Origin: Mizuhopecten yessoensis
Lineage: Eukaryota
Length of the DNA stretch: 64,000 nt
Direction of reading: 5' to 3'
Assembly: GCF_002113885.1 (NCBI RefSeq)
Contig: NW_018406654.1
Location: 298,957 to 362,956 of the forward strand
In this document: positions 25,773 to 50,700 of the stretch, one piece after another
Layout: each line of letters begins with the position of its first letter
Numbering within the stretch: position 1 is the first letter of the stretch
Notes under the pieces: generated by a model
Told to the model about the DNA's origin: nothing
Databases searched by the model: none
Seen by the model: only the letters and a program-made list of their open reading frames with translations
Made by a program: the position numbers and the translations under genes

Positions 25773-25920
25773 CCAATCGCTACAGGTATATTACAGGTAA
25801 CTCACAGGTATAGCTCAAGTAAATCTCAGGTAAGCGCTGGAAGGTATATGACGGAGACCTTTGGGACAGGTATATAAGGAGGACCGTCAGACTTGAATAG
25901 GGTTCGTCGGAGCCAGTTCT
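25773..25920 (+). promoter_or_regulatory. Core promoter of the micro-exon gene: CCAAT, 5x CAGGTA, TATA box
   Basis: ccaat 25773; caggta at 25783, 25794, 25805, 25827, 25867; tatataag 25871-25878; Inr-like ccagtt near 25913; ATG 25983. Confidence 0.7.
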
Positions 25921-25982: not shown

Positions 25983-26016
25983 ATGCTTTCGTTGGTAGTT
26001 ACAGTGGTCCTTCTCG
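25983..26016 (+). CDS. Exon 1 coding part, signal peptide MLSLVVTVVLL(G)
   Basis: aaaATG at 25983, hydrophobic run, donor g|gtaagt at 26017, phase 1; TATA box about 110 nt upstream. Confidence 0.88.
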
Positions 26017-29000
26017 GTAAGTATACTTTACGAATTTTAATTTTAATTTATAAAAAAACGAAACGATATAATATAAGACTTGAAATATATGCGAAAAAAT
26101 ATTTGAAAATATACTGATTTTTTTAATTGATATGTTTTAGTTACCTGTATATACATTTGAAATAATAAAAACAATAGCACAATGTGGAAAAGGATATACA
26201 ATTATGATCTTAATTTGTAATTGGTTTTTAACAATAGTTGGTGTTTTACCGGACTTTTAACAGATTTGCATAACTCATTAAATCATTGCAAAATATAGTG
26301 TTAGGTATCCTGTAGCTACTATCGTGATATATTAATGGATGTTTCCTATACAAATCATGTCTTTTACTCTTATCATTGGATAAGGTATATACATGTAATT
26401 GCAAGGGGAAATCAAACATAATACATATATAAAAAGGCCACTGAACTGAAAATCAGACTAACTCTGCGCTCTTTTTTGCGAGAGTCGAACAGATAAAACA
26501 AAATGTACTAACACGTTTTCATCTCTCAACATTAACCTGCAAACATATAAAAAAAAAAAGTTTGCAACGCTATTTGAAACAAAACTATAACCTGGCCATA
26601 TGTTTAACCAAACCCCAATTGAAGTAGCCCAAAATGGAATTATGGCATTATATAGTTTAAATTGTCTAGCATTATGAGGATTCCCTTTCCAACACAGGAT
26701 ATGCTTGTAAGTTATGAAATAATATGTTTAAATAAGAAAATGTCCATATCTTCATAAGCGAAAATGATTTCTAATATGCAAATATTTGCCAAATATAGGG
26801 TTTTAATAGCTAAAGGGAGATCAATTATAAATGTATATGCATATATATAAATGAGTATGAACGGGTCAAAAAAGCAATGCATCGTCTTGCTTCGCTAGCT
26901 TCGTACTTATACTTTTACATAGACATATTGCGAATGGACACACCCACATCTATAACGAGAAGGAATGACAAAAGTATCCCTTATCTTTCTGCATTAAAAT
27001 GTATAACCAAACAATTACCTCGAGATCGCTAAATCGTGTTAATAAAAAAAGTATCTCTAAAGCAAAAAAGTAAAGTCACGTTCACACACTCTTTAAGTTA
27101 ATAACCTTCTTATCTATTTGTTGGAATGTGTCTGTCTCTTCCATCTAGCCCTTGGTAATATTCATATGTTTCTCTAACACCTGAGACCACATTATTTACA
27201 ATTTGAAAACGAGTCACTAACAACTAATTTAGCATATTGTATAAAAGAGAAGGGAGTCTCTAAAACATTGGTCAAGTATACTTTAAAACAGGGAGCGCCT
27301 TAACTAAACATAGTTTACTTAGTTTAGTTTAGAATCTCAAATTTAATCCCGTACATTTTAAAAAGGATAATTATGTTTGTTAAACCTAATGCTGTAAACT
27401 ATAAAACAGGGGAAGGCATTATCAAAAGGTACGTCTAAAAGTTGGTTAATTTTTAAGACTTAATTGAGTTACAACGGAGAAGGGAGTCTATAAAGGCTAG
27501 TTAAGTAGATTGAGTTAAAACTGAGAAGGGAGTCTCTGAAAGCGAGTGAAGTAGATTGAGTTAAAACTGAGAAGGGAGTCTCGGAAAGCGAGTGAAGTAG
27601 ATTGAGTTAAAACCGAGAAGAGAGTCTCTAAAAGCGAGTGAAGTAAATTGAGTTACAACGGAGAAGCTGGTCTCTAAACTCTGCTCAGTGCATTATATAA
27701 CAGAAATGAGTTTTTTTTCAAATTAGCCCGATGTTTTTCCCAACACACAAATAACACAACATTATACCGAAGTGTTACTGAAATCATAGTACACGGAGAA
27801 AACAATCTCCCTTAAATCTAGATATGTATAAATTACAACAGAGAAGGTTTTTTTTAAATCTTGTCCAGCATATTTGAGAATGGAAAGGGTCGAAAAATGG
27901 TCAGTATATTGTAAGCTAGTTAGGTTAGTGTGTAACGTTTATTTTGTATACTTTATTATATAGATAGGAGTCACTAAGATCTAGTCAAGTATACTTTACA
28001 ACCGAAAAGGGAGTCAATGAAAAATAAACTAGTACATACATCGACCGAAACAAAAACGTGAATCCAAAAACTCGTCTAGTACATGTTACGACGTCGAAGA
28101 GAGTCTGCTTAATCGTGTTCGGTGTTACTTAGAAAGTTGAGGGAACCTCCATATTGTTTAAAAAAATGACAGATGCAGCCATAAGGAGTCATCTTTTCAT
28201 GTGTTTATAATCTGTATACAGTGATATGTTATACAAATCTGTTAGGTATATTAGGTGTTTAATAGAACTAGAAATGTTCGTAAGTTTACATTAATTGATT
28301 AATTCGTATTTAATAAAATGTCATATTGCATTTGTTGTAGGCCTGGCCGCAAGTGGTAAGTTTTATTGTCTTACAGAATTTTATATGTATTCTTAAAGTC
28401 AAGTTTTTCAAATTTCAATTTTTAAGTGTAAAACAAGTGATTTTGCAAGATTTATATAACAATTAAATCACTCGCATTTTTGTTTTATAAATAAGATGTT
28501 TGCTTTATAAAAGTTATTATTTTGATTTTGTCATAATTGATTTGTATTACTGTATTCAAATTCAATTAAATTTTAATTCAATGCGTTTTTATATGGTCAA
28601 CAACCTATAAAACAAAAAACGCTGTGTGGTGTACCTTTTATCGATTGGAAACTTCAAGGGAAGGAATATGCAGCATTTATATCTACATGTATACCTTTCT
28701 GAAAGTGTAATCCATTTTAAAAAGGAACACTTTTAGTATTGATACAGAGCAATATGTCATACCAAACAATGTTACACAATGATACCAACACCACACAGCC
28801 TTAAACAGGTCTAAGTTTTCTGCAGTATACACAACATAGCACTACTACTAAATTGATTCTTTTCTTCCATATTGGAAAATTGTTAAAACACATATTTTTG
28901 GAACCAGAACATGCTTTGGTAAGATCTGTCCACTCAGAAACACACTCTACAATGTACCTGCGTCTGAAAACTAGGATATGTCACACATACGAACATATAT

Positions 29001-29750
29001 ATAATAGTAAACTGCGAGATAACACTAAACTAAATATGTTGACCTCGTTGCAACACCTGCGATCTGTCCTATTCTTTTCCTTCTTCTCTGCCCATTCATT
29101 TCAGTTGTGTCTTCATATGCACATTATTTCCAATGATCTGAGCTGAAGAACTCGTAATTTACAAAATTACAAACAGTTTTTAAGGTTGCAATATTAAGGA
29201 CACATTGATATAGCCATAACGGCATGCGTATATTGGGTTCTTATTGGAATAAACCACATTTGTTTATTTCTAAAGATAACATATGGCGCATTTGTTTCTG
29301 TATGTGACTTTCTTAATCCGAGATTCCCCGACAGTTTCGAATAGCGTTAGTCCAGTTTTTAATACATGCTTGCAATATCCAAATCTGTTCAAAAAGTGGT
29401 TACTTTGATCGCACCTAAAGATGACGTCATGCTATTGTTTTGAATGAGACGTCATCATCCAAACATGTCATAATGAGAAGGAGTTCTTTCAAAAAGCTTA
29501 TGATATGAGCACCCATTCCCCTTTTAATGGAAGCAATTGATTGTGTTACTTGACACAAACAAATATTTTAAATAATCAAAGCAAAACTTTTGCATGTTTG
29601 GCCCATATTTTCGGAATTTTCAATGTTAATCATTAATATTTCTTCAGTCTTTAATAAGGTCAATACAGGCATTTAGTTCAAACAAAAATAGCCAGCACAA
29701 GTGTTCCAGTCGTTCTTCACGAAACAGAGTTATGTTTTTTCTTCAAGCTT

Positions 29751-29797
<47 letters not shown>

Positions 29798-32700
29798 AAT
29801 ATACAGCCGATGATTTGTTATTTTATAACGATTTAGGAAAAACGTATTACATGGCAATAGTTTTAGGTTAGAAATCTTTTTTTGGAAGATCCCGACTCAA
29901 ACATTGCCATCAGGTCTATTGGCAAAATTTCCCCACTACACAGCATTACCGTTAACATTCTCGACCCCTTACCTAGATATATTAATATGTCGTGTGTCGG
30001 TTACCTTGGTTTTACACGACGAACATATGTGGACTACCTCAGCCCTATGTGGTTCTCTGCGAATTTTTTAATGTGTGTCAATGATCCGTTTTAATGATAG
30101 TGTGACGCCTTAACTTTAATGATATGCCATTATGTGTTGACGCTATGACATTTCACAAAAGGTAATATAATAATATTACTGCACTCGCGTATTATTAAAC
30201 AATATGTTACTGTACTCACGAACTATTTAATTAAACGAACGGAATATTGATAGCTATAGGAAATAAATATTCTGATATAGAGTATTATTGCTTACTCAGC
30301 AATAAAGCTTAATGGCGTCAGTGTAACGTTCATGGCGTTTCAGACGTAGAGACTGACCTATGATTAATATATTTGACAACACGAGAATAAAAATTGATTA
30401 CACAAAAAACATGCAGGTGTAAGAGATGTCATCTTAGCTTCCGTGTATTACGAATGAATCGAATTTAGCAAGGTAAGCATGTACTGAGTATGTGTCATGC
30501 TTATTTGATTTAATATGTATATATTTATGGTGTAAAAACAAATATACTAAAACCAGATGTATTATGTTTCATATCTAAATATATATGCAAATTAACCGAA
30601 GAAGTGTTTTTTTGTAAACTTTGTGTCTTTCGTTACTGTTAAAAATATATACCAAGAATTAGATGATCAATATACTTGCAATTTTATAAGTATAATAACG
30701 ATTACCTATTTACAATAGATATATAAGTACAATGGCCAAATTGAAAAATAAGAGGTAGATAAACGATGTCAAAGAAAAGTTTATCAGGAATAGGATTCAT
30801 ACAATAGGAAAATTAATATCACTAATTAAAAAAATACCATAGCTATATGCAAAACGAAGGCGAGATATTGTTCTAAGGGGTAGATACACACATTGTTCTA
30901 GTTTCTAACAGGGATTAGATAAATACTATAGCCAATATCATCTGTTATGGAAAATATATATAACACACATTTATCAGAACCAGGGCACATGTCTGACTTC
31001 ACTTGATTCGTAATAAATGTATATAGCTACACCCTTTTTTACGTGACAGAGATGTCATTATTTGAATTAAAAGGAAATAACTCTTTGGCTTCTTTCGTTT
31101 GACAGTTAAAATAGTCTATCGTGTTCATGGTATCGTATTTGTCAAGTTATGAAACCATTTTGAGTGACATTTGACCTCAACAAATTAATTGATGTCCTCT
31201 TTAACTTAATACAGCAAGTGATTGTTGACCTTAAAATTAACATAATTTAGTTTGATGTGTATGTAGATGTTATGTTGTTCATTGTGGCTTGCCCTTTCCG
31301 TCACGACGATAGTAAAATAATTAACGGATTAAATTATTAGAGGATGAAAAATAGACGACAGATTGAGCCTAATTGTTAATGTATGTAAATTATTTTTATT
31401 CGTTTCTGTCACCAAACACGGAGGTAAACGTCGTGTTAAGATATGTATCGTGTGGTAAAAGAAATATAATAATCTGAAATTGAACGGTGAGTGTTAAACG
31501 ATGATAAAATGTCCAATATCTGAATAATTGAACAACGAAAAGTATAATACAACGGTAATGTGATATACAAATTAAAAAAAGTAACGCACAAAATCAAATA
31601 AAGATTAAAGACCATTAAGTACATGCTTGAATATATAATTTAATCAACATTTATATATCACTCATTAAGCCTCATTTAACTGAAAGTGATATCGTGTTAC
31701 AGGTTTAATTAACACAAAAAACAGCGATGGGGAGATTTAAACTGGACTCCTAGAGGAAATTTTCTTTAAGTAGAGATTGTTTGGTGTATATGTTGAACTG
31801 CATATTATTACATTTAACCTAGTTTTGCTGCTGTATTATTTGTGGTTTTACTCTACCACGAAATAATATATGAATAGGAACAATTTAATTTAGTGTAGGA
31901 TAATGCACATTATTACATTTAACCAAGTTTTGCTGCTGTAATATTCGTGGTTTTACTCTACCACGAAATAATAGGAATACGAACAGTTTAATTTAGTGTA
32001 GGATAATGCGTATCGCCTATGTTAGCATAATCGACTTTTAGATGGACATACCTATTGCGATTTAGTATGCACTGAATTCTTTATAAAACTAGTGATGCAA
32101 TTCTTTTAGCTATTTTTTGTTTTACGTCAGCATTTGTTTGTTGACATTCACTAAGCTTAAAGTTAATTTATGCACAGTTTCAACATTTTTTTAACATCAG
32201 ATAATTCATTTTTCGAAATGCAATTTGTTGTAATTGACCACACCACAAACCACACATAAATAACACCGTGTCAATGCATCACTGTAATCAATTTCAAACT
32301 CGAAGAACAACGTTAATGCTTTATCACTTGTAAAACCACAGAGCGCGTCATCCTATTGTGCATACGGACATGTGGTTGATCAATTTTTATGTGGATCAAT
32401 GCAAAATCTGCCTACTAAGACACATAAACACAGCATATATATAAATTGATAGACGAGTGTTTGGACAGTTACGAGAATAGATAACAATGAACGCACAATC
32501 TCCCGGGGCCCTTGGTTTGTTATACGATCCAGTTATTGCAATTGTACATGCCTTATTGACACTTTATGGCATGCGCATTGGCCTCTTTCATTAACGATGG
32601 TCGGCTCTACTCATAAAACGTTAACGGCCGACGACGAGGACAACCTGGGCCCGTCAACCATACATCAGACCACTGATCATATGATATAAGAGCAGACCTT

Positions 32701-35700
32701 TGTCTGACAACAGCTTATCAATCAGGGTCGCCTTTATGACATTTTACCGAATCGTTTTATTGCATAACTGTTCGTCCTCTTTTCAAATATATATTTTGAT
32801 ATAATGGCATCAGAAATAATATACCGGGACAATTTTGTCCATTGAATGTCTCGCCCTTTACCGTCTTAATCCATATTGAACTAACTTTGAAGTTGAAATG
32901 AAGACAATAGGGAAAATTAATTTTTGCAATCTATATATATATATATAATTTTAATTTAATATAAATTTATTGGAAGACTAAACATAATAAAGATAAAAAT
33001 ATAAGGCACTAGTTATTTTATTTTATGGTAGGGTATCATGTATACTACAGAGATTGTTTTAGTGTAAACACCCAATAACAAAATCAGAAATCCTATCACA
33101 AGATGATATCAAAAAGATAAGAAACAGCAAAACAACTGGAAAAACACATTATTTGATAAATAACGACACTTGAAACCACTGTAAGATGAAAGAGTTTGAG
33201 AAGATAATGTGCCGATAAAGACACAGCTGTCTGGCTTTACACTTACCCTGGGGCGCGTATCACCAACCATGTAACTCTGTTATTGATCAGGTGACAAGGT
33301 TGACACACCTGAATGCTAAAATTGATAGCATCATCTATATTATTTAGGATCACTAGTGGTGTGTATGACATTAGTGATTTCACGTGTGGGAGGGACCTGT
33401 CAATCAATCCCACCATTAACTTGATTTGACATTTTGTTTGTAGCGTCAGCATGTAATGCTTGTTGTTAGATACTTAACATTTTGTTACCTGTCGGTGCAT
33501 TGTGATGTGTCATTATATGTTTTACTGTTTCTGTAGTAAGCATAAGAACGAATATGATCGTTATCATTTAATAAATATATATAAGATCTACCACTAGGCC
33601 TTTCTGTTGTCTAGGCCTCAGACTCATAGGGAAAAATGGCATTGCCATTAAGCTATCGCGTACTTATCATTTCTGTCCAGCATACCTAATTCCTTACCAA
33701 ATTATACAAAGATATCTATGGTATGTCGTACTTTGTGTTGTAACCGATGTTACAAGTAATTCAATGCCCATTTAATGACAGGAGATATGCTTCAGCATGA
33801 CACGAATAGCAAACGATGTATATTTTACTAACGCATGATAGTTCAAACGAAATGTCCATTTGATGAAACTGTTAAAAACGACTTGTCAACTGCTTGGTTG
33901 TAATCGTCTGAGACATAACTTTTCGGATTTGATGAGTTTTCCNGGGGGGGGGGGGGGGGGGGGGGGGGGGATTGTTGCCATGTCCCAAATGCTTCTGCTC
34001 TAAGGTTTTTACATATGTCTTGAAGTGTTGACAATTTTTGTGTGTATTTCTATTTAAATTCGAGTCATTTGTTGATGGGCAGCAAATTTATTTGAACACA
34101 AGCACTAAAAAAAGACTACCGCTTAATATGTACATTTACAATGACCTCTATTCAGTTTATAATATGATACCAGTAGAAATTTGAGAGTCAAGAACACTCG
34201 TATTACGCAAACAGTTGTCTGTCCTATTCAAACAGGAATACAAGTCATCCAGCAACTATCGTAGCATTACAAGTAATAGTAACGATACAACAATCATATT
34301 ATTCAAAAACAAAGCACCACCATTGAAACATTGCTGCTAGTGGAGGCGATTATAAAATACAACAGCCCTTGGATACACGACACCTTGATTTACTAATTTA
34401 TAAACTCTAGACCCCTCACCACCGAAATCTAGAAGATATGGACACAATGGTAAGTTGATGATCCTCGGATCAAACAAGGCTTCAACACGTTGTTAATGAC
34501 AGACGCTTCTGTAACAGCTCACAAGCACCATGACTACACACAAATTTCACCTCTGTCTGGAAGAGCAACATTTTGAGCAGCGCTTAATTGGATATGTTAA
34601 TCCATTTCGGTTGAAGCAAGTTCCATTAGGCAAATATTTTATTTAATCTTTTTGTTTTATTGTTTTGTTTATAAGAAATGTGAGTAATTTTTTTTTTTTT
34701 TTTTTTTTTGCTTTTGGACTGAAATATAAATCAGAATAGCTTAAAAAAAACTCGATTTGATGTCCCTAATTATATTTGCCACCTTGCTAACCGCCAACAA
34801 ATTTCCTGAAAAAATCATCTCAATTTAGCACAAAACGTAATAACGCCGACATCTGCGGACAAAATGCGTAACTATAACTAGGTGTCTCTGGATTTCCTAT
34901 TCATGTTTCATATAGATCGGGAAGGCTATGGACATTGCTTCAACTGAGTCATTCACACAATGTTCAACACGGCTTTATGTAATTCCACATCTGCAAAATG
35001 AATTCATTACCATTTTGAATCATCCATTAACATTTTCATCAAATCGAATACCATGTCATTGCATTACACAACTGCAGCTTTCCACAGCGAGTTTTTATAT
35101 TCGTTAAGTGACCGTAGTATCAAATTAAAGTTCAGCAGGTCATCATAAATAATCATTGATTTGAAGGATTTATAAAATGTTTCGTTTAATAGTATGAGTT
35201 GTAACGTATAATGCTTACTCAGGCCCAACATTCCCCATTGGTAAGTACATTATATATATATATCATAGAAGACCTGTAGATGCTTATTTTTTTAATCTGT
35301 TACAGTGAACATTATGAACATCGTTAATTTATGCATTTTAGTTTAAATTAGTATAAGCGTTAGATATTGCTCTTACTTAAATGTATTATAGCATATCTTC
35401 AAGTTATTAGATGCAAAGTTATACACAATCTTTTCACAAACATGATCAGTAGTTGGATAGTTTCGTATTTTATCCTTGTGTATATTGGAAAATCGGCATG
35501 TCGTATGCATGTTCTATGTAAATTGCTACTAGGAATTTCCCTTATATAATCTGAAGTATTATTATATGGCTTATAGTCATTAGATGCGAAATTATTTCAA
35601 CTATATTAGTGCGGGATTAAAGCTATATTTGTACATTATAGAATGATATGACAGATTTAAATTCGCATACGTCCTTAGTGTTCCTGTATGTCTGCTTTAC

Positions 35701-38700
35701 CTTAGCAAGTCGTTTGTTATTGATTTTACTAGTTAAGAAAATATGTTGATCACGTGACTATCCTCTAACCACATTGCTTTTTAATAGCTTTCACCTATTT
35801 GCCAGCAGATTGTTTTTAATCAAAGGTTTTGATCTTAGCTTGTGTTTTACCAACATAATGTATGCATCCTTGCATACAGGGATGTAATACAATTTGGGGA
35901 AATGTTATATTTGAAACAGATATGTTAAAAAAATCCTGAAAATCAGATTTACCTTAAAAAGTTTGTGAGTTAAATGTTCTTACGAGTCTACAAAATTCAA
36001 CGTGGGTTTGTCATACTCTTTTAACAATATAAATGAGGATAGGGCAATTGACAAACTTTTTATAATTACAACTACAATTCAAACATGGAATAATAAATAC
36101 ACAAACTGTTAATAATTAGATTAAAGAAATAGCTTCATCAATACTTAAGACAATACTTTTGTTGGTACCTTAATATGCTGAGAATCAAATAACGTTTATT
36201 TGAAGAAGAGATATTCCGTCTTTGCGTATTGCAGAGTTATCTTCTCCTGGAAGCAGGTATTGATTGTTACGTCACTTGTTTGTGAGAGTAACTTCATCAA
36301 CTTTTGAGAAAACGACGTAATTTTCTCACACAAACCAATGACGTAACAATCAATCCCTGCTCCAAAGAGAAGATAACTCTGCAATACGCAAAAACGGAAT
36401 AAGGCATCGATGATAGGCTACCATGATGTAAAAAAAAGAAAAGAAGAATGCATCAATAGAAAAGGGGAAAAGCAGTATATTAAAACCATGTAGATGAAGA
36501 GGAAATGAGGTTACGGTGACCCAGTTGTTCATCAGCATCGATTAATCGTTCACGTTTTCAAATAAAACTGCACCAATATAGCATATAAACAAAGTATATA
36601 TTAAAAAAGTGATAATTATCACTTAAATAGTTATGATATATATTCATATATACTTCAACAGATTTTACCCAAATTTAATTTACAAGACGGTAATAGCGAT
36701 ACGTTTCAACATGGAATTAATGACGTGGCAACGCCTTTTGCTGGTCACGTCAAGAGGAATAACTCTGATTTAGATCAGTGTGACATCTACGAATTCATAA
36801 AATAAATGACAGATACATCCAATTGTGATAACAATGATTTAAATATTCTGAACTATTATTTTACCCCCCAAAAAAATATAATCCTCAGATCCCTTTCCTG
36901 GACCCCAACGTGAGTATAAGAGTATTGATATAGATTGGTGTACCCCTCCTAAAATCACAATGTTGTTATAAGGTAGAAAGTAGTGCATGGAGAATGTGTG
37001 GATAATATATGCTACCTTATCGTGAAAAAACCTACACTCAAAAAGAACTCCACAAACATATCACATACAGAAAATAAATTTAACTTTTACTGTTTTATCT
37101 TTGAAAAATGATTATGTGAATCATATTTTGCTAATAGTATATGGGAGTTAACTGACCTAAATCTTATGTATTATGTGTAAGGTGGCATATAAATTAGATT
37201 AGTTTTCAGTTGAATACTGTTGATGATAAATAGTATACTCTACACGTTTTATTATTTATATGTTAAATTCATTTAGAAAAAAATATTCATATCATGTTTA
37301 TTTGATTTCAATAAATTCTATAACATTACAGATATTATGCAAATCCTATATTACATTAACAAGTACAAATTTCAAGTGCAGTGTAAAAACATACTTACTT
37401 AACAATGATAACGTTTTCAAGTAAATGCAATAATGATATATATATTAAATTACTGATAAAATACTATCTTTAAATGATCATGCGACTGTAAATCACGATG
37501 TGTATCATCATGTAAGTCACAATTACTCAAAATTACTTATATGCATGAATATCATAACCTGATATTATGTAAATACAGCTTAAGAATGAGGACGTCTGTT
37601 GTTTAATACGTCAAGGGGTATAACTCTAATTTGAACAAATATATATAAAACAAAATATAACTATTTGAAAAAACTACTAAAATAATTGAACAACTACTTT
37701 ACCTACCGAAAATTGTAATCCCCAGATCCTTATCGTGGACAACGACGTGAGTATAAGTTCATGGAGCTAGATGTCCTAGCAACAAAATACTTTTGGTAAA
37801 AGTTGTTGAGAAAGAAGTGCATTTACAAATATTGGTTGTATATGCCACACTATAGTGAAATAAAACTATGCTTAAAAGAACTACGCTGATGAATAGAATT
37901 TACTTCACGCATACTATTGAGAAGTAATTGTGAATCCTATTATGCTAAAAGTCTAGGGGAGATAATACTGACTTAAATCATATGAATAATTTGTAAGGTA
38001 GCATATAATTCAAATTACTTTTCAGTTGAATATTGTTGTTAATTTTTGAAAAGTAATACATTTATCATTAACTTCCAGCCAATTTATATTTTTTTTAATA
38101 CAAACTTATTTTATTTCAATAAATGATATAACATTATAGAAAGGTTGCCAATCCTATATAAAGTTATAAATACACATTTAAGGTGTAGTTTAGAAATAAA
38201 AAAAAAATACTTACCAATGATATTTGTTAAGTTATTTGATTAATGATTTATGTATTGAGTTACTGATAAATGCATTTTTTGAATAATAATGCAAATATAA
38301 ACCAGAAGGAATATCATGATGTAGCGAAACGTACTCATACATTACGTGTGAACATATATCTTAAGAGAGGCGATATTGGCTGTTGAATACTGCAAGAGAT
38401 ATACCTCGAACCTTAACAAATATATGAAATCATTAGTAACTCTATGTAGAACTACTAACAATAAGTGGACAACTACATTACCTAGCCAAAACTGTAATGA
38501 TCATATACATATCCTGGAATCCGACGTGAGTATATAAGTAGGAAGACATTAAGTGATTACTGATATTAACAAAAACACTGAATTTGTAGGCAATGTCGAT
38601 AGATTGAGTGTTCTGGGATATTTGAAGGTTACATGCTACCTTTTGTACATACTATTTACATTGAGGAAACCTGTCAATTATTTGAATTCCGATTTTTAGA

Positions 38701-41700
38701 TTGTTTTTGATAAAACTATAAATGAAATATGTATTTTTTGAATTTTGAATTACTGCATATCATATATCAAAATTCAATATGAAGGCAGGTAACTCTTTAT
38801 ATGTCACGGTTATTATGTGTAAGGTGGCATATAACCTTAAACTGACTTGTATTGGGATGATTTTGATGAGAAATGCTCGTATTTTCGACATAGTTTAAAT
38901 GCATTTAATCTAAGGTATTGCCGTTTGTACATTGGATTTGTGTTTGTCTAACACAGACATGTGCAAATTGTACTTTTTTACCTATAATCTAAAACATAAT
39001 TTTAAACTGCTTATTTTTTGCAGACCCGATCATTCCAGGTAAATATGACATATTATTTTTTTCCTCGTTAATGCAAATAAAGAAACTGATCTGAACTGAT
39101 CATGGATTCTGTATAACAGTTGCTGCCTATCGATACTGAATTGATTGGGTTTTTTTCATTTGATATTTAATTATACAATAACATACATGTACACTATTTA
39201 TATTTACGTCATATGTTTTCAGCAAGGGGACATTCGAATACCAAGGTTATAAGTAAGTACACATTTTGATACATTTATGCCACATATACCCTGTGCTATA
39301 TTTTACTAAGGAAATAACATTTACGGGAGATTATAATTTAAAGCTCCATTTCCGAATACAAATAGGAATTAGGTGTATATTTAATATTAATATCACATTT
39401 TCTGCACTGTATTTCAATTATTATAATGATTAATGTGATAGAAAAATAATGCTGACGAGCAAATCAACCACAAATGTCTCCGAATAATGCACTCTGATAA
39501 AGATATAGGGCCGTCATCACATAAATTATCAATATGGTGTATACTTACCAAGTGCCATGGAGTAAACTCAAAACATTTTGTTTACAATATCATCATGGCT
39601 GATAATGGTACATCCAGAGTACATTGTCAAAGATTTACATTTATAGATGTCAAAATAAATCTATTTGAGATGTTGAACCAAAACAGTGATTTTTATTTAG
39701 ACACAATTGCTATTCGTGTTGAACGTATGTCTGAAAAACACAGTATTTTAGTTACGAACCCTTTCTTCACTTCGGTCACACTTCGTATTATATTTGTGTT
39801 ATTTTGACCAACTGATTTAATCAGTCGTTCCATTTGCTCTGCTTTCTCATGAATCAAAACGAATATATACACCTAACAAACGAAAAAAGTAGAAAATTAT
39901 AATATGTTTTGTCTTATTTTTAAGCTGTACCGAAAGTTCATCGTGAACAAGTTGGTATACTCCACCAGGAAGCGGGTAAGTTATGTAAAACATTCCACAT
40001 CGAACGGTTATTTGCGAAGTGTATAATTCACCGTTTTGCTATTTTACAGTCCAGTATAATAAAAATGATGATAATAATAATATACAATATTTACTATTGC
40101 GCCCTATCTAGCTAGAATAAGCCACTCTGAAGCGCTTTAGAGTACATAGATATATAATTTATACAATCAAAACAACTAGCATGTACATTAATCAATGCAA
40201 TTTTGAGGAATTCGCAGGGGCTGCCTTATCAGGCGCTTACTACTGGTCCTATGCCACCTGGCTAATAGCTTATTATGTGATTGCGTGTGTGCTGGAGATG
40301 TAATGTGTAAAACAGTATTTGTCATTTTTAAGTGTTTGTATTGATTTGAAAAGCAATTATTATAACCAGTTAACTATGTGTAATGTATAATTAAAACATT
40401 GCTGTCTATCATGTAATTAAGGCGAAAAATGTGGTTATCTGTTAATGATGTAGATATGTATGTATTTTAACTTTGTGTTCACAAATAAGCAAATCAAAAT
40501 ACTTTTGCAGGGTTTTAAACAAGATAATCTGAAAATATATCAGTTTTATGGCTTATGTATATTATTTAAGAAAAACAGCTATCGTATAAAAAACAAAATT
40601 AATGGGAACGTTGTTCAAACGTGTTCAATGAAAGAACAAAATACAACAAAGAGAAAGTAAAAGCTATTGTTCAACACGTATACTAACTACATTCTTCTTT
40701 TGTAGTCCCTGTCCATCAGACACAGGTCGTGACCAATGAACGTAAGTTTAACGTATTTATTTTATACATCACAACCATTGAACACAGTGTTCATTTTTAT
40801 TGAAGTGATATTGTTCATCCAATTTAGTCTTTATTTTCGTTAACCGGCGTTATACGTTTTTTTCATTATTCAAACAGGTTGGTACTTTATATGTAATTAA
40901 CTGTTAAAGTAGATATTCTTGCGTATTAACTCACTGAACACTGAACATTTCCTGATATGCATTCACACAGATTGTTTTATAATGAGAATGCTATCATATA
41001 CGTTTAAATAGGATGACGTATCAGCTACGTCAGCATGTTTTACATGGGTACATTGTCTCACAAGTTCTGCATTTGAACAACTTTTTAATTGGAAGATAAT
41101 TTGTAATGTGTTGTTTGATTTTTTCAGGGGTGAAAATTGTAACACAAAAACAGCCTGTTCTCGTCCCACAAACCAGTAAGTAGAATTATGGTATTATTTA
41201 TCTATTAATGTAGTTATTGCAAAACATTTCTATCTCTTTGTGGAGTAGTTTTGGAGAAAGGTAACATCGGAGTATCATAATATAACCTTTTTCTTTTTCT
41301 TTTACAGGGGTTCAAAAGATTCTCCAGCAGGTACCTGTGCAAACTGTTAGTAAGTAAACATTTGTCATTTCAATTGTAAGAAAACATATAGATAATGGCG
41401 GAAATGCATCGTTTGATCTAATGTATTGCATCACAGATGGTCGAGTCCTTAATGACGAAGAAATGGTATTATTTGTGTCGCAAGTACTAATAATGAACAT
41501 TTTTTTAAATTTTTAATTACAGAAAAAGTTGCAGCGCCAATGATCTTCAAGCATAAAGGTAAACAATCCCTTGCAACGATATGTTTTATTGAATCATTTA
41601 TATACAAGTATTAATATAATAATCGTTCGATTCTGCTATAAATATTCTGGTTGCATATACCGTCTTTGCGTATTGCAGAGTTATCTTTTCTTGAGAGCAG

Positions 41701-44700
41701 GTATTGATTGTAACGTCACTTGTTTGTGAGAGTAACGTCATCATCAATTCTTGAGAAAACGACGTAATTTTCTCACACAAACCAATGACGTAACAATCAA
41801 TACATGCTCCCTAGGGAAGATAACTCGGCAATACGCAAAGACGGAATATGTACAATAAGATTATGATATCTTCGGTAAATGCTAATTCTTTGTTCATGTG
41901 ATTTGACAATAACGTTTTTCATTATGTTAATTGAGGTGTCTTTTTAATTTGTTGTCACTTTCCCTTTTCCGTATTCGAAAACGTGATATTACTTGTATTT
42001 CATAACGGATGTCTCCTTGCTATTCATTTCATTGATTATATCTTGCCCTAGTCTCATCGAGTTTAAGGTCGAACAACGGTTTTTATTTCATTTCCTTGTG
42101 ATAATTTTAGTCAAAAGGGGGATAAAAATCAATTTAAAATCTTGAAACGTAATTTTCATTTGATAGCATGCCAAATATGTCTACTATTTCAAAACGAATA
42201 ATTTCACGTAAACGGCTTTCTCCCAAAGAAAGGTTTTCGGGGGTTCGCACTAGAGTGTATGATCCATTTTCGATGGGTGCGACATGTCGTGCAGGAAATA
42301 GCTAAATGGTTATCGTGTTGGATCACTTGATGTAGTATCTATACCTTTGTGGATATTCCGGATATCTTACCTTTTCTGTTCATGGGCAAATTTTTAAAGT
42401 TTGTCTTTTTATCGGTTATTCATTGTATTCTTCAGGTTGGCGTTGTTGTACTTGCTGTGTATTGTAGTTTATAGACCCCCAAACCCCCCATGTTTTTTGT
42501 TTTTTGTTTTTTTTTAATATTTACTGACCAAAATGTGTCACTGGCAATATAATGTTACGACACCTAATTTAGATATATATTCCACTCAGATGTCATTATT
42601 CTTTATGGACAATATAGTTGTATAATATGAACATTATGGCATGGCTGTCTCATAACTTCATAACTAAATGTTGTTGATTTTGTAAATATCATTGGTCCCG
42701 TTAAATTTATGAGCCGTTGTGTTTCCGCTACGTCATGTTTTGGTGTGCTGGCTATTAATTTCTTATATTTGTTGCTTCATTTTCTTTAATTACAAATTGC
42801 TTGCATGTTGTCTATTTTTTCATTCAGAAATTGTTCCCTTCATCAAGGAAAGAACAAATCACGGTGAGTAGCTTCATCCAAGTATATACATACATAACAT
42901 TTCCCAATTTCTCAATAATATTTTTTTATCATTGATAATTTTCTCGTCCACAAATGATAATGTTGGCCTCATATCTAGATAACCTAGTTACCTAGAAAGT
43001 CTTCAATGATCTGGTCTCTCTTACGTAAAACCTCATTATATTATTTAAAGATATTGCTATCAATTAGCATTCACAATAACTACCATTTGTGTCATAATTA
43101 AACTATATATATAAGTAATATATTACTTGTATCTGCCAATTACAAACTTATTAATGTATTTTCCTTTGTGTTGTATTGCAGTTGTTCATAAAAGTAAGTA
43201 ATTTAACACAAGAAATGATAAATCTAATGAAAAGGAATTCAAAATAATGCAAACGAAATGTAACCAGCGATACTTGAATATATAATGTTCCAATCAAAAT
43301 AGTATGAAATTAATTTAAATGGTAGGGACCATTACTTTAGTCTACGGTAGACATTAAGAAACAGTACCGATAAAAATAATCGTATTTTGCAAAAAGCATA
43401 AATTACCTTCACGAATATGTTCCATGATACACAGCATATAATTATTCTTTGTTTGATTGAATGTAATGTCGTTAATTGTTAAATGGCATTGATTTGCATG
43501 GCCATGCATGTGTTGTTATTGTGTGACTGATTTTGTTTTCGTATTTATCTGCTCAAGTTGAAATTTGTTGAATTCATGTTTAATTCCTTGAAAAATATGA
43601 ATCCCTGTACCAATGCAGGCAAATACAAGGGTACCCACCTCTGTTTCTTATACATGCTGTTATTGACCTTCATCTTGTTAAGGATATGACTTAAATGCCC
43701 TATAAAAACGGAAAATAATGTGTGAACAGCTCTGAGATGACCTACGAACTATTGTATGATAAAGCGGTATATAAGAACTCGAATTATTATTATAATCATT
43801 ATTTGTTATCTTTTGTTCCCAGTTAAAGTGCCTAAGTACATAACAAACACTGTCGTGCGTAAAGGTAAGTTTTATCTATATAATTCTATATGCATGTACA
43901 TAAACAAAATCATAGCTGATGACGAAATAAGACCTGTGGTGACGTAATGCCGGATCGCAAAGGGTGCGAGATATAGTGTTATAGTTGGCTATAGAGTCTG
44001 TCTTACAAGAGTAAATTCAAGTTTTACCGCGTGTCATTTGCAATTTAGAAATTAATAATCAAGAAATGATAAGCGTGAAAACCAACTGTCTCGAGTTTGG
44101 GTTGTTTTTCCTCAAATTACGTTTATGTTGTATTTAGAAAAAAGATGATTATCTTAATTATGATGTCGCAAAATATGACGTTGAAAGTAGTGTTACTTAA
44201 CTTCATGATTAACAGATTGACCAATGAAATAACCATGTGCCAGTGGGGTCGGGTTCGACTTTCAGTTGTCATTATAATAGGTATAGGGGTGTCTTGGTCG
44301 TTTATCATTTCTCGTTGATACTAATTCCTAAATAATGGTTATAAATTTAAACTGAACGTTATTTTAAAGAATCTGATTCACAGACTGTAAAATATCAAGA
44401 GGTTTTTAAATTGATATGTTCATTGTCAAGTTGTATATGTTAGGATATTTTACCATTGTTATTTAAATTATTTGTTTCATCAAATTCCTTTGTTTTTATT
44501 TATTTTGCATTTTCATATATTTCAGTTCCCGAACCTGTTGCAATTCCAAAAATCCGTACGTATACATTGAGCTATTCAAATTGCTTATTGAACATATTTG
44601 TGAAAAATCGTTACATTTTAAGTCTTGCAGAATAGTGTCTTAACATTTTAACGTGGGTTTTCCAGGCCCTAAAATGTCTGATAGATATTTGTTGTTATGT

Positions 44701-47700: not shown

Positions 47701-50700
47701 TTATGTACTCCGTAGTGAAATTCTGTGAAACAATGCCGGGTAATACATTGTTGTACACTGTGACGTTTCTTTGTGCAAGTAAGACTATATAAGACTGCAT
47801 AATACTATTTACTTGTTAAACATAAATAGTTTACAGCTACAATTTGAGTGAAACATTTTAACTGTGAACCATTTAAGATCAATTTTGTAATCATGAATTG
47901 GATATTTCGAACGAAACGCTTTGATTCGATGAAGCGTCTCCTTTTATTAAGTTTATAAGCTTCTTACGTATCAGCACATCCGGAAGGTTCCGGTAAATGG
48001 AACACGTTATAAAGTTGTCATTTTAATTAAATAATGTTATTTATTTTTCTGTTTGACGTCAAAATATATAATACTACAAGAAGTAACATTGCATTGTATC
48101 TTAAACTTTACATTTCGTAGAATCAAATTACATTTTTGATATAGTTTCCCAGTATATGTCAATTTCATATTTAATTAATGTCGTTTTATATTGAAAAATA
48201 ATAGTATAACTTTGCTTGGTATGATTATATACAAATGTCATATTATAACTTATATTCGTTTCTGTTTCTCCCTTTGTAGTTATTAGAAATTGTAAGTATA
48301 CTTTTGATCATCCACGAGACATACTATTTTAAAGCGTGTGCAGTTATTTCATTACTAGCATTACCATACGAAAACAAACTTTAAACAAACAAGTAATATA
48401 ACAATAGTGAGTTGTAGATTTATACAATGCACGGATGTGATGTAGAAAGCATTATCATTATCGCACACGTTATCCTAATGCATAAATGTTTTAGAGAGAG
48501 AACTTTAGTTTCAATACATAAAACTTAATTAATTACTCTCAAATATGTTAACAACTAAGAAAAACACACACTTTGTAATCATTGCAATTCTTCAAAAATA
48601 TCACAATGATTGTTTATTTAAATGATGATGTCCCCATATTCTTATATCTCTTCTTTATTTTATGAACAGCTCCTTCCCCGGGTAAGTCAACAAAACTGAT
48701 CATTTTCATATTACTCCATAATTTAACTTTACATGACGGAAATTTGTACATCGATATTTGAAATCAAACAATTATTTTCTATTAATATGCCGAACACCTT
48801 AGGGCAATGTTATATCCCAATTCCATCGCATAGTGAACATTACTTCAACATCATTGTCGCATTTCATGCAATATATAAGCCTTTGTATATAATAGTAATA
48901 TTGAACTACAATATACTGTAATTGTTTACACTAATATACATATATACGCGATGTATTAACTGATATTACGATATGAAGATTTTATATCACAATTTGTCAG
49001 CATTAATTTGAATTTTTCATACCTGGTTATCAGTATAAAATGACTGATGACAGGTCTACAAACAACAATGCATATTATATGTTCATATTGAAATATTTTA
49101 TTGATTTCTTTATTTTTCCTCCAACAGTTCCAGTGAAGGGTGAGTGTGTTCTTTCAAATATACGTGATGCATGCTATATTAAACAACTACGTAATACATA
49201 ATCTAATAATAATGTTATTAATAATTTATTGTTAAGATAATACAAATGACGACACTTGTTGAGTATCTTTAAAACTTGTACATGAGAAAGATACGATTTT
49301 TCTACTACAATAAGATAATATAATTTATTAAAATATGATTTTTGTATGAACTAACATCTCATAGACACGTCGTTCAAGTCGCATCAACTTGAAATGCAGT
49401 CAATTTGTATGTAGTTGATGGTTCCTAGTCCTTGAAGTTAGCGTGTTAACAATTGTCAATGCATCTGTTATATCATTGAAGTATAATGGTGAGGTTGGGG
49501 AGAATTTCCCATTGATTTTAAAACAACTATAATAAAAAAAATCGTTATCTTATCTTTACAGTTGCCGATCCTAAGTACATCGACCGTGTGCGTAAGTAAT
49601 TATGTTTTATAAGTTGATTCCTGTAAACACAATCATATTTTTTCACTTATCTTGTGAATAGAAATATCTTTGTTTAAAACAATATATAGAGAGAGAATAA
49701 TTCATGTCTTTTTCCATATCACACCCAGTATCAACCCGATACTGCAATATCAGCCCGAGGGCCCGAGGGCCCGAGGGCTGATATTGCATGGTCGAGGGAT
49801 GATACTGGGTGTGATATGGAAAAAGGCATGGTTTATTCTGTTTATTACATACTTTTCACCTTCTTAAAGTCCTTATTTCTGAGAAAAAAACATCATTAAA
49901 TTAGTCTTTACATGAATCAGAAAGAGAAGTATTTTTGTTGTGTAATTTTAGACAATTGACTTTTTTTTAAAACACAAATAAATATATTGTCTTATTACAT
50001 ACTTACTAATAAAAGTTACTACCTTATGATCTATTTTTCTTTTGAACTATTGAAAAACGATTTTTTTTCCAAGAAAGGGTGTGATACGGGTTTTTGCGGG
50101 CTGATACGAGTTTTGGGGTGTGATACGGCGGGGGCTGATACGGGTTTTGGGGTGTGATACTGCGAGGGCTGATATGGGTTAGAGCAATTGTGTCGTATCG
50201 CATATACAAAAAAAAACGTATTTATTATTAAGTATGTAATAAATATCTATAAATGGTGTAGATATTTCTAAGCGTGTCCATATCTTTGCTAGTTAACGTT
50301 TTTAAGCTGGTGTCTTAAACACAAAATAAGCGAAACTGTATTTCACTTCAAGACATTACATTAATCCAATCAACTAAAATTACTGAAATATTTGAAGATT
50401 AACATGTGTAGATTGCTTAAGGAAACGGGTTGTACGAAGTAAGGCCATACATGAATCTATTTTGTTCAAGCTTAAATAATACAGAACTTTAATATTTTAC
50501 TTGGAGGTCCGCTCTCGTAATATATACGTTTAAACTTCGTATCATTTCAAATAGTAAATACATCCTATTTTCACCTGTTTTTTGTTTATTATTTTGCAGA
50601 TGTAAAGACACAGATTGTTCCAAAACACAGTAGGTTTATAAGAATGTTACCTATTTACTTATTTTTTTTCATATATTGATAAGATACAGCAAGCTTGTGT

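What the first reader, a model, noticed from the sequence alone, without database searches (positions are those of the whole stretch)
36600..38900. Micro-exon birth and death: triplicated ~0.8-kb cassette with two intact exons and one acceptor-dead copy
Seen: three diverged intron+exon units each contain a 21-nt exon ending in ac|gtgagt: DPFPGPQ (36889), HPYRGQR (37726) and HTYPGIR (38505). The third has CAT instead of CAG at the acceptor. The differences between copies mostly change amino acids. Inference: this shows how the array grows by tandem duplication of symmetric exons with flanking intron, followed by divergence or loss. Copies 1 and 2 have poor pyrimidine tracts and could be skipped or mutually exclusive.
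Basis: seen in the sequence. Interest (0 to 1): 0.72.

Follow-up and report, generated by a model that had tools for sequence, protein, structure and literature searches.

The report
Triplicated micro-exon cassette, two copies spliced
A 0.8-kb piece of intron carrying a 21-base exon was copied three times inside a (probably scallop) gene for a secreted repetitive protein; RNA reads show two copies are optional exons in roughly 15-25% of transcripts, while the third, which lacks a splice acceptor, is unused: a clean but ordinary case of exon duplication.

Summary
Window 36552-39023 is three diverged tandem units (A-B 65% identity over 1231 nt, E=1e-102), found nowhere else in the 988-Mb genome. 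Each unit carries a 21-nt phase 1-1 segment ending AC|GTGAGTAT. Copies 1 and 2 have a CAG acceptor; copy 3 has CAT.

RNA-seq from one run (X15) shows GT..AG junctions 36909->37726 (81 reads), copy 1 -> exon 39024 (46) and copy 2 -> exon 39024 (70). A further 407 reads join exon 28341-28355 straight to exon 39024. So both copies are real but minority cassette exons, included in about 22-24% and 13-15% of transcripts. They are co-included, not mutually exclusive, and copy 2 appears almost only together with copy 1. Copy 3 has no spliced reads.

The host gene starts at ATG 25983 with a signal-peptide-like exon. It continues as at least 40 predicted phase-1 micro-exons (mostly 12-18 nt) past the window end. 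The cassette sits at the 3' end of its 10.7-kb second intron, so inclusion adds 7 or 14 residues just after the likely signal-peptide cleavage site.

Loss versus never-gained for copy 3's acceptor, copy-number variation and any function remain untested. This is a known kind of event (tandem exon duplication with a pseudo-exon) in an unusual gene that resembles schistosome micro-exon genes (MEGs).

The parts
25870..25879 (+). TATA-like box (gtatataagg) about 110 nt upstream of the start codon of the host gene
   Evidence: Read. Promoter role is inferred, not tested.
25983..26016 (+). Coding part of exon 1: ATG plus hydrophobic MLSLVVTVVLL, ending in phase 1 at a gtaagt donor
   Evidence: Its last bases TCG appear upstream of exon 2 in the 407-read loose-end consensus.
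28341..28355 (+). Exon 2 (15 nt, GCCTGGCCGCAAGTG, completes the signal-peptide-like ..GLAAS), phase 1-1
   Evidence: The loose-end consensus TCG|GCCTGGCCGCAAGTG|ACCCGATCATTC (407 reads, agreement 0.99) shows it spliced directly to exon 39024.
36552..37410 (+). Tandem unit A (upstream intron, cassette exon a, downstream intron)
   Evidence: Self-BLAST and alignment A1.
36889..36909 (+). Cassette micro-exon a (21 nt, phase 1-1, x-PFPGPQ). Weak acceptor, consensus GTGAGT donor. Included in about 22-24% of transcripts in run X15.
   Evidence: Joints 36909->37726 (81 reads, GT..AG) and 36909->exon 39024 (46 reads). Acceptor pyrimidines 10 of 20.
37411..38229 (+). Tandem unit B. It looks mosaic: the exon and downstream flank group with A, while the upstream flank is as close to C as to A.
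37726..37746 (+). Cassette micro-exon b (21 nt, phase 1-1, x-PYRGQR). Included in about 13-15% of transcripts, essentially only together with exon a.
   Evidence: Joints 36909->37726 (81 reads) and 37746->exon 39024 (70 reads). Acceptor pyrimidines 11 of 20.
38230..39023 (+). Tandem unit C, the most diverged. It ends at the acceptor of exon 39024.
38505..38525 (+). Pseudo-exon (copy 3): open 21-nt homologue with intact GTGAGT donor but CAT in place of CAG (T at 38504) and TGATC in place of the TCCYC pyrimidine run
   Evidence: Sequence. No joints, and depth 0 / 0.72 (about one unspliced read) in the 38400-38599 bin of the expressing run.
39024..39038 (+). Constitutive 15-nt exon (x-PIIP) that receives exon 2, exon a or exon b
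   Evidence: Its letters ACCCGATCATTC lie between both sides of the joints to 39220 and in the 407-read loose end.
39223..39252 (+). Constitutive 30-nt exon
   Evidence: Joint 39252->39925, GT..AG, 457 reads.
39925..39975 (+). Constitutive 51-nt exon. Carries a synonymous C>T variant at 39962 in the RNA sample.
   Evidence: Joint 39252->39925. The loose end behind 39975 (512 reads) reads into exon 40706.
40706..40741 (+). Next exon (36 nt), first of the long downstream array of predicted phase-1 micro-exons
   Evidence: The loose-end consensus TCCCTGTCCATCAGACACAGGTCGTGACCA behind 39975 matches this exon.

Best explanation
A roughly 0.8-kb unit (about 300 nt of intron, a 21-nt phase 1-1 exon and about 480 nt of intron) was duplicated in tandem twice. 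The array sits at the 3' end of the 10.7-kb second intron of a gene for a secreted V/K/T/P/H-rich protein built almost wholly of phase-1 micro-exons.

The duplications most likely arose by unequal crossing-over, which would also explain the mosaic middle unit.

Copies 1 and 2 keep a CAG acceptor with a poor pyrimidine tract and a consensus GTGAGT donor, so they behave as weak cassette exons. In the one expressing RNA sample about 78% of transcripts skip both, about 9% carry copy 1 alone and about 13-15% carry both. Copy 2 is hardly ever seen without copy 1.

Because every exon is 21 nt and phase 1-1, each combination stays in frame. Inclusion inserts 7 or 14 residues directly behind the predicted signal-peptide cleavage site (..AAS|D).

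Copy 3 lacks the AG and the short pyrimidine run, is not spliced in, and is a pseudo-exon.

Shown here: the duplication, the splice junctions, the isoform proportions in one sample and the silence of copy 3. Inferred: the unequal-crossover mechanism, the signal-peptide cleavage site, exon 2 as the partner upstream of copy 1, and that copy 3 was once functional.
For: - Duplication: in-register repeat families; E=6e-104 and 2e-11; alignment; K2P 0.48 to 0.76. The unit is unique to this locus.
- Splicing (run X15): joints 36909->37726 (81 reads, 54 start positions, GT..AG), 36909->exon 39024->39223 (46), 37746->exon 39024->39223 (70) and 39252->39925 (457). A loose end before 39220 (407 reads, 0.99 agreement) gives exon 2 joined to exon 39024.
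- Depth per base agrees with the junction counts: about 134 for exon a and 114 for exon b against about 640 for the 30-nt exon (derived from the depth bins).
- Weak acceptors: 10 and 11 pyrimidines in 20 against a mean of 15.1.
- Copy 3: CAT plus TGATC, and no spliced reads.
- Mosaic middle unit: informative sites are AB 52 / BC 64 upstream and AB 131 / BC 22 downstream, Fisher p=2e-12. Pairwise z-scores: upstream B-C 19.8 and A-B 14.5; downstream A-B 29.5 and B-C -1.0.
- Gene context: TATA box, ATG and a hydrophobic exon 1, exon 2, and 17/15/10 strict phase-1 exon candidates per 10 kb on the + strand against 0-1 on the - strand.
Against: - Expression was seen in only one of four RNA runs from four studies, so the isoform proportions come from a single sample of unknown tissue.
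- The library is unstranded. The strand rests on GT..AG orientation.
- The junction upstream of exon a was not displayed. Exon 2 is inferred because no joint or depth lies between 34400 and 36888.
- The junction 'exon 2 -> exon b' could not be counted directly. Its rarity is inferred from the balance 81 versus 70.
- The mosaic signal depends on alignments of about 55-65% identical AT-rich sequence. A gap-permissive re-alignment gave a weaker picture.
- The exons are no better conserved between copies than the flanking intron, so nothing shows that the inserted peptides matter.
Confidence: 0.85

Rival explanations
1. Copy 3 was never an exon. The acceptor arose in the common ancestor of copies 1 and 2 after the first duplication, making this exon birth followed by duplication, not birth followed by death.
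For: The exon and downstream flank give the grouping ((A,B),C). On that tree, a gain on the A/B stem is as parsimonious as a loss in C. Copy 3's acceptor region differs at three positions, not one.
Against: The longest three-way invariant run in the whole alignment is ACGTGAGTATA, the exon end plus donor. The block around the exon is the best conserved part of unit C (columns 300-400: 0.64-0.76 identity against 0.3-0.55 in most of the rest). The frame is still open. All this hints at past constraint on copy 3. However, another invariant block (the satellite 24-mer) shows that such runs can arise for other reasons.
Confidence: 0.3
2. Inclusion of copies 1 and 2 is tolerated splicing noise from decaying or nascent exons. 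The extra 7 or 14 residues have no function.
For: Both are minority isoforms with weak acceptors. Exon divergence between copies (29%) equals that of the flanking intron. Frame-neutral 21-nt inserts in a low-complexity protein would escape nonsense-mediated decay and selection.
Against: Inclusion of 13-24% is well above usual noise levels. Donors are perfect consensus and invariant. Inclusion of the two exons is strongly coupled (about 64% of exon-a transcripts also carry exon b, against about 0 without exon a), which suggests regulated recognition rather than random leakage.
Confidence: 0.35
3. Copies 1 and 2 are mutually exclusive alternative exons, as in many tandem exon duplications.
For: They have the same length and phase and are adjacent duplicates.
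Against: 81 reads from 54 start positions join copy 1 directly to copy 2. The commonest form contains neither.
Confidence: 0.02
4. The similarity of the three units reflects dispersed repeats (transposon or satellite insertions) rather than a local duplication, and the '21-nt exons' are chance.
For: Each unit contains a piece of a dispersed satellite (the 24-mer has 224 genomic hits), and an abundant MITE (miniature inverted-repeat transposable element) lies 150 nt upstream.
Against: A whole-genome search with unit A finds only this locus, and the exon-plus-donor motif occurs only here. Homology runs through about 800 nt in register, including the exon. Junction reads prove two of the exons.
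Confidence: 0.02

Closest known systems
Tandem exon duplication giving alternatively spliced exons (the general phenomenon; e.g. PMC8373072 on human tandem-exon-duplication-derived isoforms, PMC5589949 for an oyster AOX example)
   Same: Adjacent exons of equal length and phase arose by local duplication of an exon plus intron, and both are used alternatively in mRNA.
   Different: Classical cases are mostly mutually exclusive substitutions of ordinary-sized exons. Here the duplicates are 21-nt micro-exons that are skipped or co-included, so they act as additive cassettes, and a third copy is a silent pseudo-exon.
Schistosome micro-exon genes (MEGs; bioRxiv 10.1101/2023.06.21.545858, read)
   Same: A secreted protein whose coding region is a chain of very short symmetric exons (MEGs: 6-81 bp, many of 15 bp) separated by much longer introns, with transcript variants generated by leaving exons out.
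   Different: MEGs are described as specific to Schistosomatidae and have 10-20 exons. This gene is in a mollusc genome, has at least 40 predicted micro-exons, and skipping is shown only for the two duplicated exons at the N-terminus. Sequence homology was not tested (no exon is long enough, and the joined protein was not searched). This is a resemblance in architecture, not membership.
Correlated adjacent cassette exons (PMC2432081)
   Same: Two neighbouring cassette exons whose inclusion is positively coupled: exon b is seen essentially only with exon a.
   Different: That study concerns human and mouse genes and ordinary exons. The coupling here is inferred from junction counts in one sample.
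One-motif-per-exon repetitive structural genes (titin PEVK, elastin, collagen; from general knowledge, not tested)
   Same: Long arrays of short symmetric exons each encoding a short repeat, thought to have grown by exon duplication and prone to exon skipping.
   Different: Those exons are typically 27-84 nt or more. Here the modal length is 12 nt and the composition is V/K/T/P/H-rich. No homology has been established.

Membership tests
Tandemly duplicated exons | Neighbouring exons in one gene are homologous by local duplication | tested here: met
   Units align over about 800-1200 nt including the exon. They are unique to this locus.
Tandemly duplicated exons | Same length and same intron phase, so that exchange or addition keeps the frame | tested here: met
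   All three are 21 nt. The phase 1-1 frame is open in all three.
Tandemly duplicated exons | More than one copy is present in mature mRNA | tested here: met
   GT..AG junction reads for copies 1 and 2. One RNA run only.
Mutually exclusive exon pair (subclass of the above) | Transcripts carry one copy or the other, never both or neither | tested here: not met
   81 reads join copy 1 to copy 2, and 407 reads skip both.
Pseudo-exon (decayed duplicate) | Homologous to a functional exon but lacking a canonical splice site and absent from mRNA | tested here: met
   CAT instead of CAG at 38502-38504. No joints and about one unspliced read in the expressing run. Absence rests on one sample.
Pseudo-exon (decayed duplicate) | Was functional in an ancestor (loss rather than never gained) | not testable with these tools
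   Needs orthologous loci from other pectinids. No eukaryotic relatives are available here (one search states that G000 has no relatives).
Schistosome MEG family | Most of the coding sequence lies in symmetric micro-exons (multiples of 3, at most about 81 bp) between long introns | tested here: met
   At least 40 strict candidates of 6-63 nt, modal length 12 nt, all phase 1-1, strongly strand-specific. Seven micro-exons confirmed by RNA: 28341, the two cassette exons, 39024, 39223, 39925 and 40706.
Schistosome MEG family | N-terminal signal peptide (secreted product) | tested here: inconclusive
   Exons 1 and 2 read MLSLVVTVVLL-GLAAS, which looks like a signal peptide by eye. No predictor was run.
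Schistosome MEG family | Sequence relationship to a named MEG, within Schistosomatidae | not tested
The largest exon encodes 17 residues, below every search tool's minimum.

The most novel reading that the evidence does not exclude
The host gene represents an undescribed bivalve counterpart of schistosome micro-exon genes. It would be a secreted protein assembled from 40-60 symmetric 12-51-nt exons, in which duplication of exon-plus-intron units and combinatorial, coupled skipping of the copies produce a set of mature N-terminal variants that are used biologically. The same genome holds other phase-1 micro-exon arrays according to two earlier notes.
Probability: 0.2. Interest if true: 0.6.

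Novelty: new member of a known kind. Interest (0 to 1): 0.4.

Why it matters
The locus preserves several stages of exon-array evolution side by side, with transcript evidence: two duplicated micro-exons in use at different, coupled inclusion levels, and a third copy that is silent. The introns are still alignable enough to see the duplication units.

It also shows that 21-nt exons with poor pyrimidine tracts are recognised in a bivalve, and it flags a gene made almost wholly of 12-18-nt exons that automated annotation could easily mis-model.

The principle itself (tandem exon duplication feeding alternative splicing, with pseudo-exons as by-products) has long been known, so the value is as a well-documented example, not a new mechanism.

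Tried and rejected
- **Dispersed-repeat origin.** Whole-genome searches with unit A and with the exon-plus-donor motif found only this locus.
- **Upstream exon candidates.** 34411-34449 and 35222-35239 have good splice consensus (and sequence) but zero RNA depth in the expressing run. They are rejected as exons in that sample.
- **Other RNA runs.** X18, X19 and X20 showed no expression of the gene, only repeat-derived reads on the MITE, the satellite piece and 40.0-40.4 kb.
- **Other exon-plus-intron duplicates in the gene.** Self-BLAST of 45 kb found none apart from this cassette, MITE copies and small intronic tandem repeats.
- **Structured RNAs in the duplicated introns.** Rfam gave only a sub-threshold hit on the MITE hairpin. 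Tandem Repeats Finder gave nothing relevant, because the unit exceeds its period limit.
- **Re-alignment test of the mosaic unit.** A gap-permissive pairwise re-alignment gave inflated background identity and only weak confirmation. I therefore call the mosaic suggestive, not proven.
- **Protein family identification.** No single exon reaches the minimum length of any protein tool (largest is 17 residues).
- **Candidate terminal exon.** A possible last exon at L005:4496-4650 was read but has no RNA support and was not pursued.
- **Literature.** Searches for micro-exon genes in scallops or bivalves returned nothing relevant.
- **Polymorphism and copy number.** Position 38504 and copy-number variation could not be examined, because the single read-laying run went to RNA.
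Full report
**1. The observation**

Reading 36300-39200 confirms three 21-nt segments.
- Copy 1: 36889-36909, ATCCCTTTCCTGGACCCCAAC.
- Copy 2: 37726-37746, ATCCTTATCGTGGACAACGAC.
- Copy 3: 38505-38525, ATACATATCCTGGAATCCGAC.

Each ends ..AC and is followed by GTGAGTAT. Copies 1 and 2 are preceded by CAG; copy 3 is preceded by CAT, with T at 38504.

The repeat structure is well beyond chance.
- The repeat finder puts the three in one 64-nt family with spacings of 837 and 779 nt, and finds several more in-register families in the flanks.
- A sensitive self-BLAST aligns 36552-37755 with 37411-38534 (65% over 1231 nt, E=6e-104) and 36849-37375 with 38466-39005 (59%, E=2e-11).
- I set the units as A 36552-37410, B 37411-38229 and C 38230-39023 and aligned them (alignment A1). 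K2P distances are A-B 0.48, A-C 0.76 and B-C 0.75.
- A whole-genome search with unit A finds only this locus. The exon-plus-donor motif with 2 mismatches finds only copies 1 and 2.

So this is an old, local, tandem triplication, not a dispersed element and not an assembly artefact.

**2. The host gene**

A scan for AG|..|GT segments that are multiples of 3 and open in phase 1 reveals a striking array on the + strand. There are 17, 15 and 10 strict candidates per 10 kb between 40 and 70 kb, against 0-1 on the - strand. The modal length is 12 nt (15 exons), then 18 nt (7). The inner codons are rich in V 15.5%, K 14%, T 12%, P 9%, H 8% and I 8%.

The 5' end has these features.
- A TATA-like box lies at 25870.
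- ATG at 25983 opens a hydrophobic exon (MLSLVVTVVLL) that ends in phase 1 at 26016.
- A 15-nt exon at 28341-28355 follows (..GLAAS).

The cassette therefore lies at the 3' end of a 10.7-kb intron (28356-39023).

The assembly has 987.6 Mb in 82,659 contigs. From memory the statistics match the Yesso scallop assembly, but I did not test this.

**3. RNA evidence**

The look-up of sequencing runs offered raw RNA-seq runs of the same species. I laid four runs, from four studies, on 34400-40399. Only X15 expresses the gene. Its junctions are as follows.

| Junction | Reads |
|---|---|
| 36909->37726 (GT..AG, 54 start positions) | 81 |
| 36909->39220 with ACCCGATCATTC between (copy 1 -> exon 39024-39038 -> exon 39223) | 46 |
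| 37746->39220 with the same letters between | 70 |
| 39252->39925 | 457 |
| Loose end before 39220 reading TCG\|GCCTGGCCGCAAGTG\|ACCCGATCATTC (agreement 0.99): exon 1 end, exon 2, exon 39024 | 407 |

Taking the three junctions into exon 39024 (407 : 46 : 70), about 78% of transcripts skip both copies, about 9% carry copy 1 alone and about 13% carry copy 2.

Since 36909->37726 (81 reads) is at least as frequent as 37746->exon 39024 (70 reads), copy 2 is practically always preceded by copy 1. Inclusion is coupled: about 64% of copy-1 transcripts also have copy 2.

Depth converted to per-base values (about 134 and 114 against about 640 for the 30-nt exon) gives the same picture.

Copy 3 has no joint, and depth in its bin is about one unspliced read. 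The candidate exons at 34411-34449 and 35222-35239 have zero depth.

No joint or depth lies between 34400 and 36888. So the exon upstream of copy 1 must lie outside the laid stretch. Exon 2 is the frame-compatible candidate, but this is an inference.

**4. Why the copies behave differently**

Pyrimidine counts in the 20 nt before the acceptor are 10 (copy 1), 11 (copy 2) and 9 (copy 3). The confirmed neighbours have 13-15, and the predicted array has a mean of 15.1. All three donors are the consensus GTGAGT.

Copy 3 differs from TAATCCYCAG by three changes (TAATGATCAT). It has lost the short pyrimidine run as well as the G. No in-frame alternative AG exists in the 30 nt upstream.

Weak acceptor plus strong donor fits low, context-dependent inclusion. 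No AG fits silence.

**5. Coding consequences**

All junction codons stay open.
- Exon 2 ends in G: G|AT gives Asp before copy 1, and G|AC gives Asp before exon 39024.
- Copies 1 and 2 end in C: C|AT or C|AC gives His.

The per-exon peptides are x-PFPGPQ, x-PYRGQR and x-PIIP. The variants therefore differ by 7 or 14 residues right after ..AAS, the likely signal-peptidase site (by eye; no predictor was run).

Between copies, 6 of 21 bases differ in every pair and only one change is synonymous. But exon identity (71%) equals that of the flanking 50 nt (62-77%). The peptide shows no constraint beyond the neutral level. 'Mostly amino-acid-changing' is what random substitution would give and is not evidence of diversifying selection.

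**6. How the triplication arose**

Informative sites are heterogeneous along the unit.
- Upstream of the exon: A=B 52, B=C 64, A=C 22.
- Downstream of the exon: A=B 131, B=C 22, A=C 64.
- Fisher p=2e-12, with the best breakpoint about 10-20 nt before the exon.

Independent pairwise alignments against shuffles agree.
- Upstream z-scores: B-C 19.8, A-B 14.5, A-C 0.9.
- Downstream z-scores: A-B 29.5, A-C 7.0, B-C -1.0.

A middle unit whose 5' part is C-like and whose 3' part is A-like is what unequal crossing-over between two misaligned units produces. Later gene conversion would also fit.

A gap-permissive re-alignment was less clear, so I rate this as suggestive.

**7. Birth or death of copy 3**

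The longest three-way invariant run in the alignment is ACGTGAGTATA, the exon end plus donor. The exon block is also the best conserved part of unit C. This hints that copy 3 was once under splicing constraint.

But the ((A,B),C) grouping makes a gain on the A/B stem equally parsimonious. Another invariant block exists for unrelated reasons (section 9). An outgroup is needed, and none is reachable with these tools.

**8. Does the case show how the array grows?**

Only partly. Self-BLAST of 45 kb of the gene finds no other exon-plus-intron duplicate. If the rest of the array grew this way, the traces are gone.

**9. Things that could mislead**

- Each unit carries, in register, a piece of a dispersed satellite. 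The 24-mer TATTATGTGTAAGGTGGCATATAA has 224 genomic hits, often in arrays at multiples of about 49 nt or at 75 nt. It attracts low-level reads in all four runs, with 'goes back' joints.
- A young, very abundant 190-nt MITE lies at 36212-36401. It has at least 1576 first-look candidates with copies 95-97% identical, and about 1000-2000x RNA depth in every run. It sits 150 nt upstream of unit A.

Neither explains the cassette.

**10. Comparison with known systems**

Tandem exon duplication feeding alternative splicing is well established (e.g. PMC8373072; an oyster case is PMC5589949; both listed). This locus is a new example. Its particulars are micro-exon size, additive and coupled cassette behaviour rather than mutual exclusion, and a pseudo-exon.

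The host gene's architecture resembles schistosome MEGs: 6-81-bp symmetric exons, long introns and secreted products. Those are described as specific to Schistosomatidae, and no homology could be tested here.

Literature searches found no micro-exon gene report for scallops or other bivalves. That is weak evidence of absence.

**Verdict**

This is a new member of a known kind, of moderate interest (0.4).

Noticed in passing
window 36212-36401; also 41655-41849 and 63560-63749: A 190-nt MITE (miniature inverted-repeat transposable element) with 83-nt inverted arms (88% complementary). It has three copies in introns of this gene and at least 1576 first-look candidates genome-wide, with scored copies 95-97% identical. 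RNA depth is about 1000-2000x in all four runs on both strands, with hairpin-type 'opposite strands' joints. It gives a sub-threshold Rfam hit to a MITE-like miRNA family (MIR4387, 31.9 bits against a gathering score of 84).
   Followed up: partly
window 37169-37192, 37985-38008, 38811-38834: The 24-mer TATTATGTGTAAGGTGGCATATAA is identical in units A and C and 83% identical in B. It belongs to a dispersed satellite: 224 genomic matches at up to 2 mismatches, often in arrays spaced at multiples of about 49 nt (49, 98, 147) or at 75 nt. It draws low-level reads from elsewhere in all RNA runs.
   Followed up: partly
window 40000-40399: This intronic stretch is covered at 10-45x in all four RNA runs, including the three that do not express the gene, with many fixed differences. 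It is presumably a transcribed dispersed repeat.
   Followed up: no
window 39000-64000 and L005:1-4240: The rest of the host gene has at least 40 predicted phase 1-1 micro-exons (15 of them only 12 nt) with strong acceptors and GTAAGT or GTGAGT donors, encoding V/K/T/P/H/I-rich short motifs (e.g. x-TKH, x-PKH, x-PKI, x-VHK). How 12-nt exons are recognised constitutively, and what the protein is, remain open.
   Followed up: partly
window 39962: A C>T variant appears in about 75% of X15 reads (438 of 582). It falls at a third codon position (CTC/CTT, Leu), so it is synonymous. The fraction suggests pooled individuals or allelic imbalance.
   Followed up: no
window 31799-32009 and 62913-63156: Two small intronic tandem duplications: 108 nt at 92% identity and 117 nt at 94% identity.
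   Followed up: no
window 49615-49919: A self-complementary stretch of about 320 nt (69% identity to its own reverse complement) sits inside an intron of the gene. It may be another hairpin element.
   Followed up: no
window 33943-33970: A single N followed by a run of about 27 G. This is an assembly or homopolymer problem. It was left as is.
   Followed up: no
L006:850-2570 (about 20-22 kb beyond the window end): Phase-1 candidate exons of a different, Gly/Ala-rich composition, possibly a neighbouring repetitive-protein gene. Another copy of the MITE lies at about L006:1780-1845.
   Followed up: no
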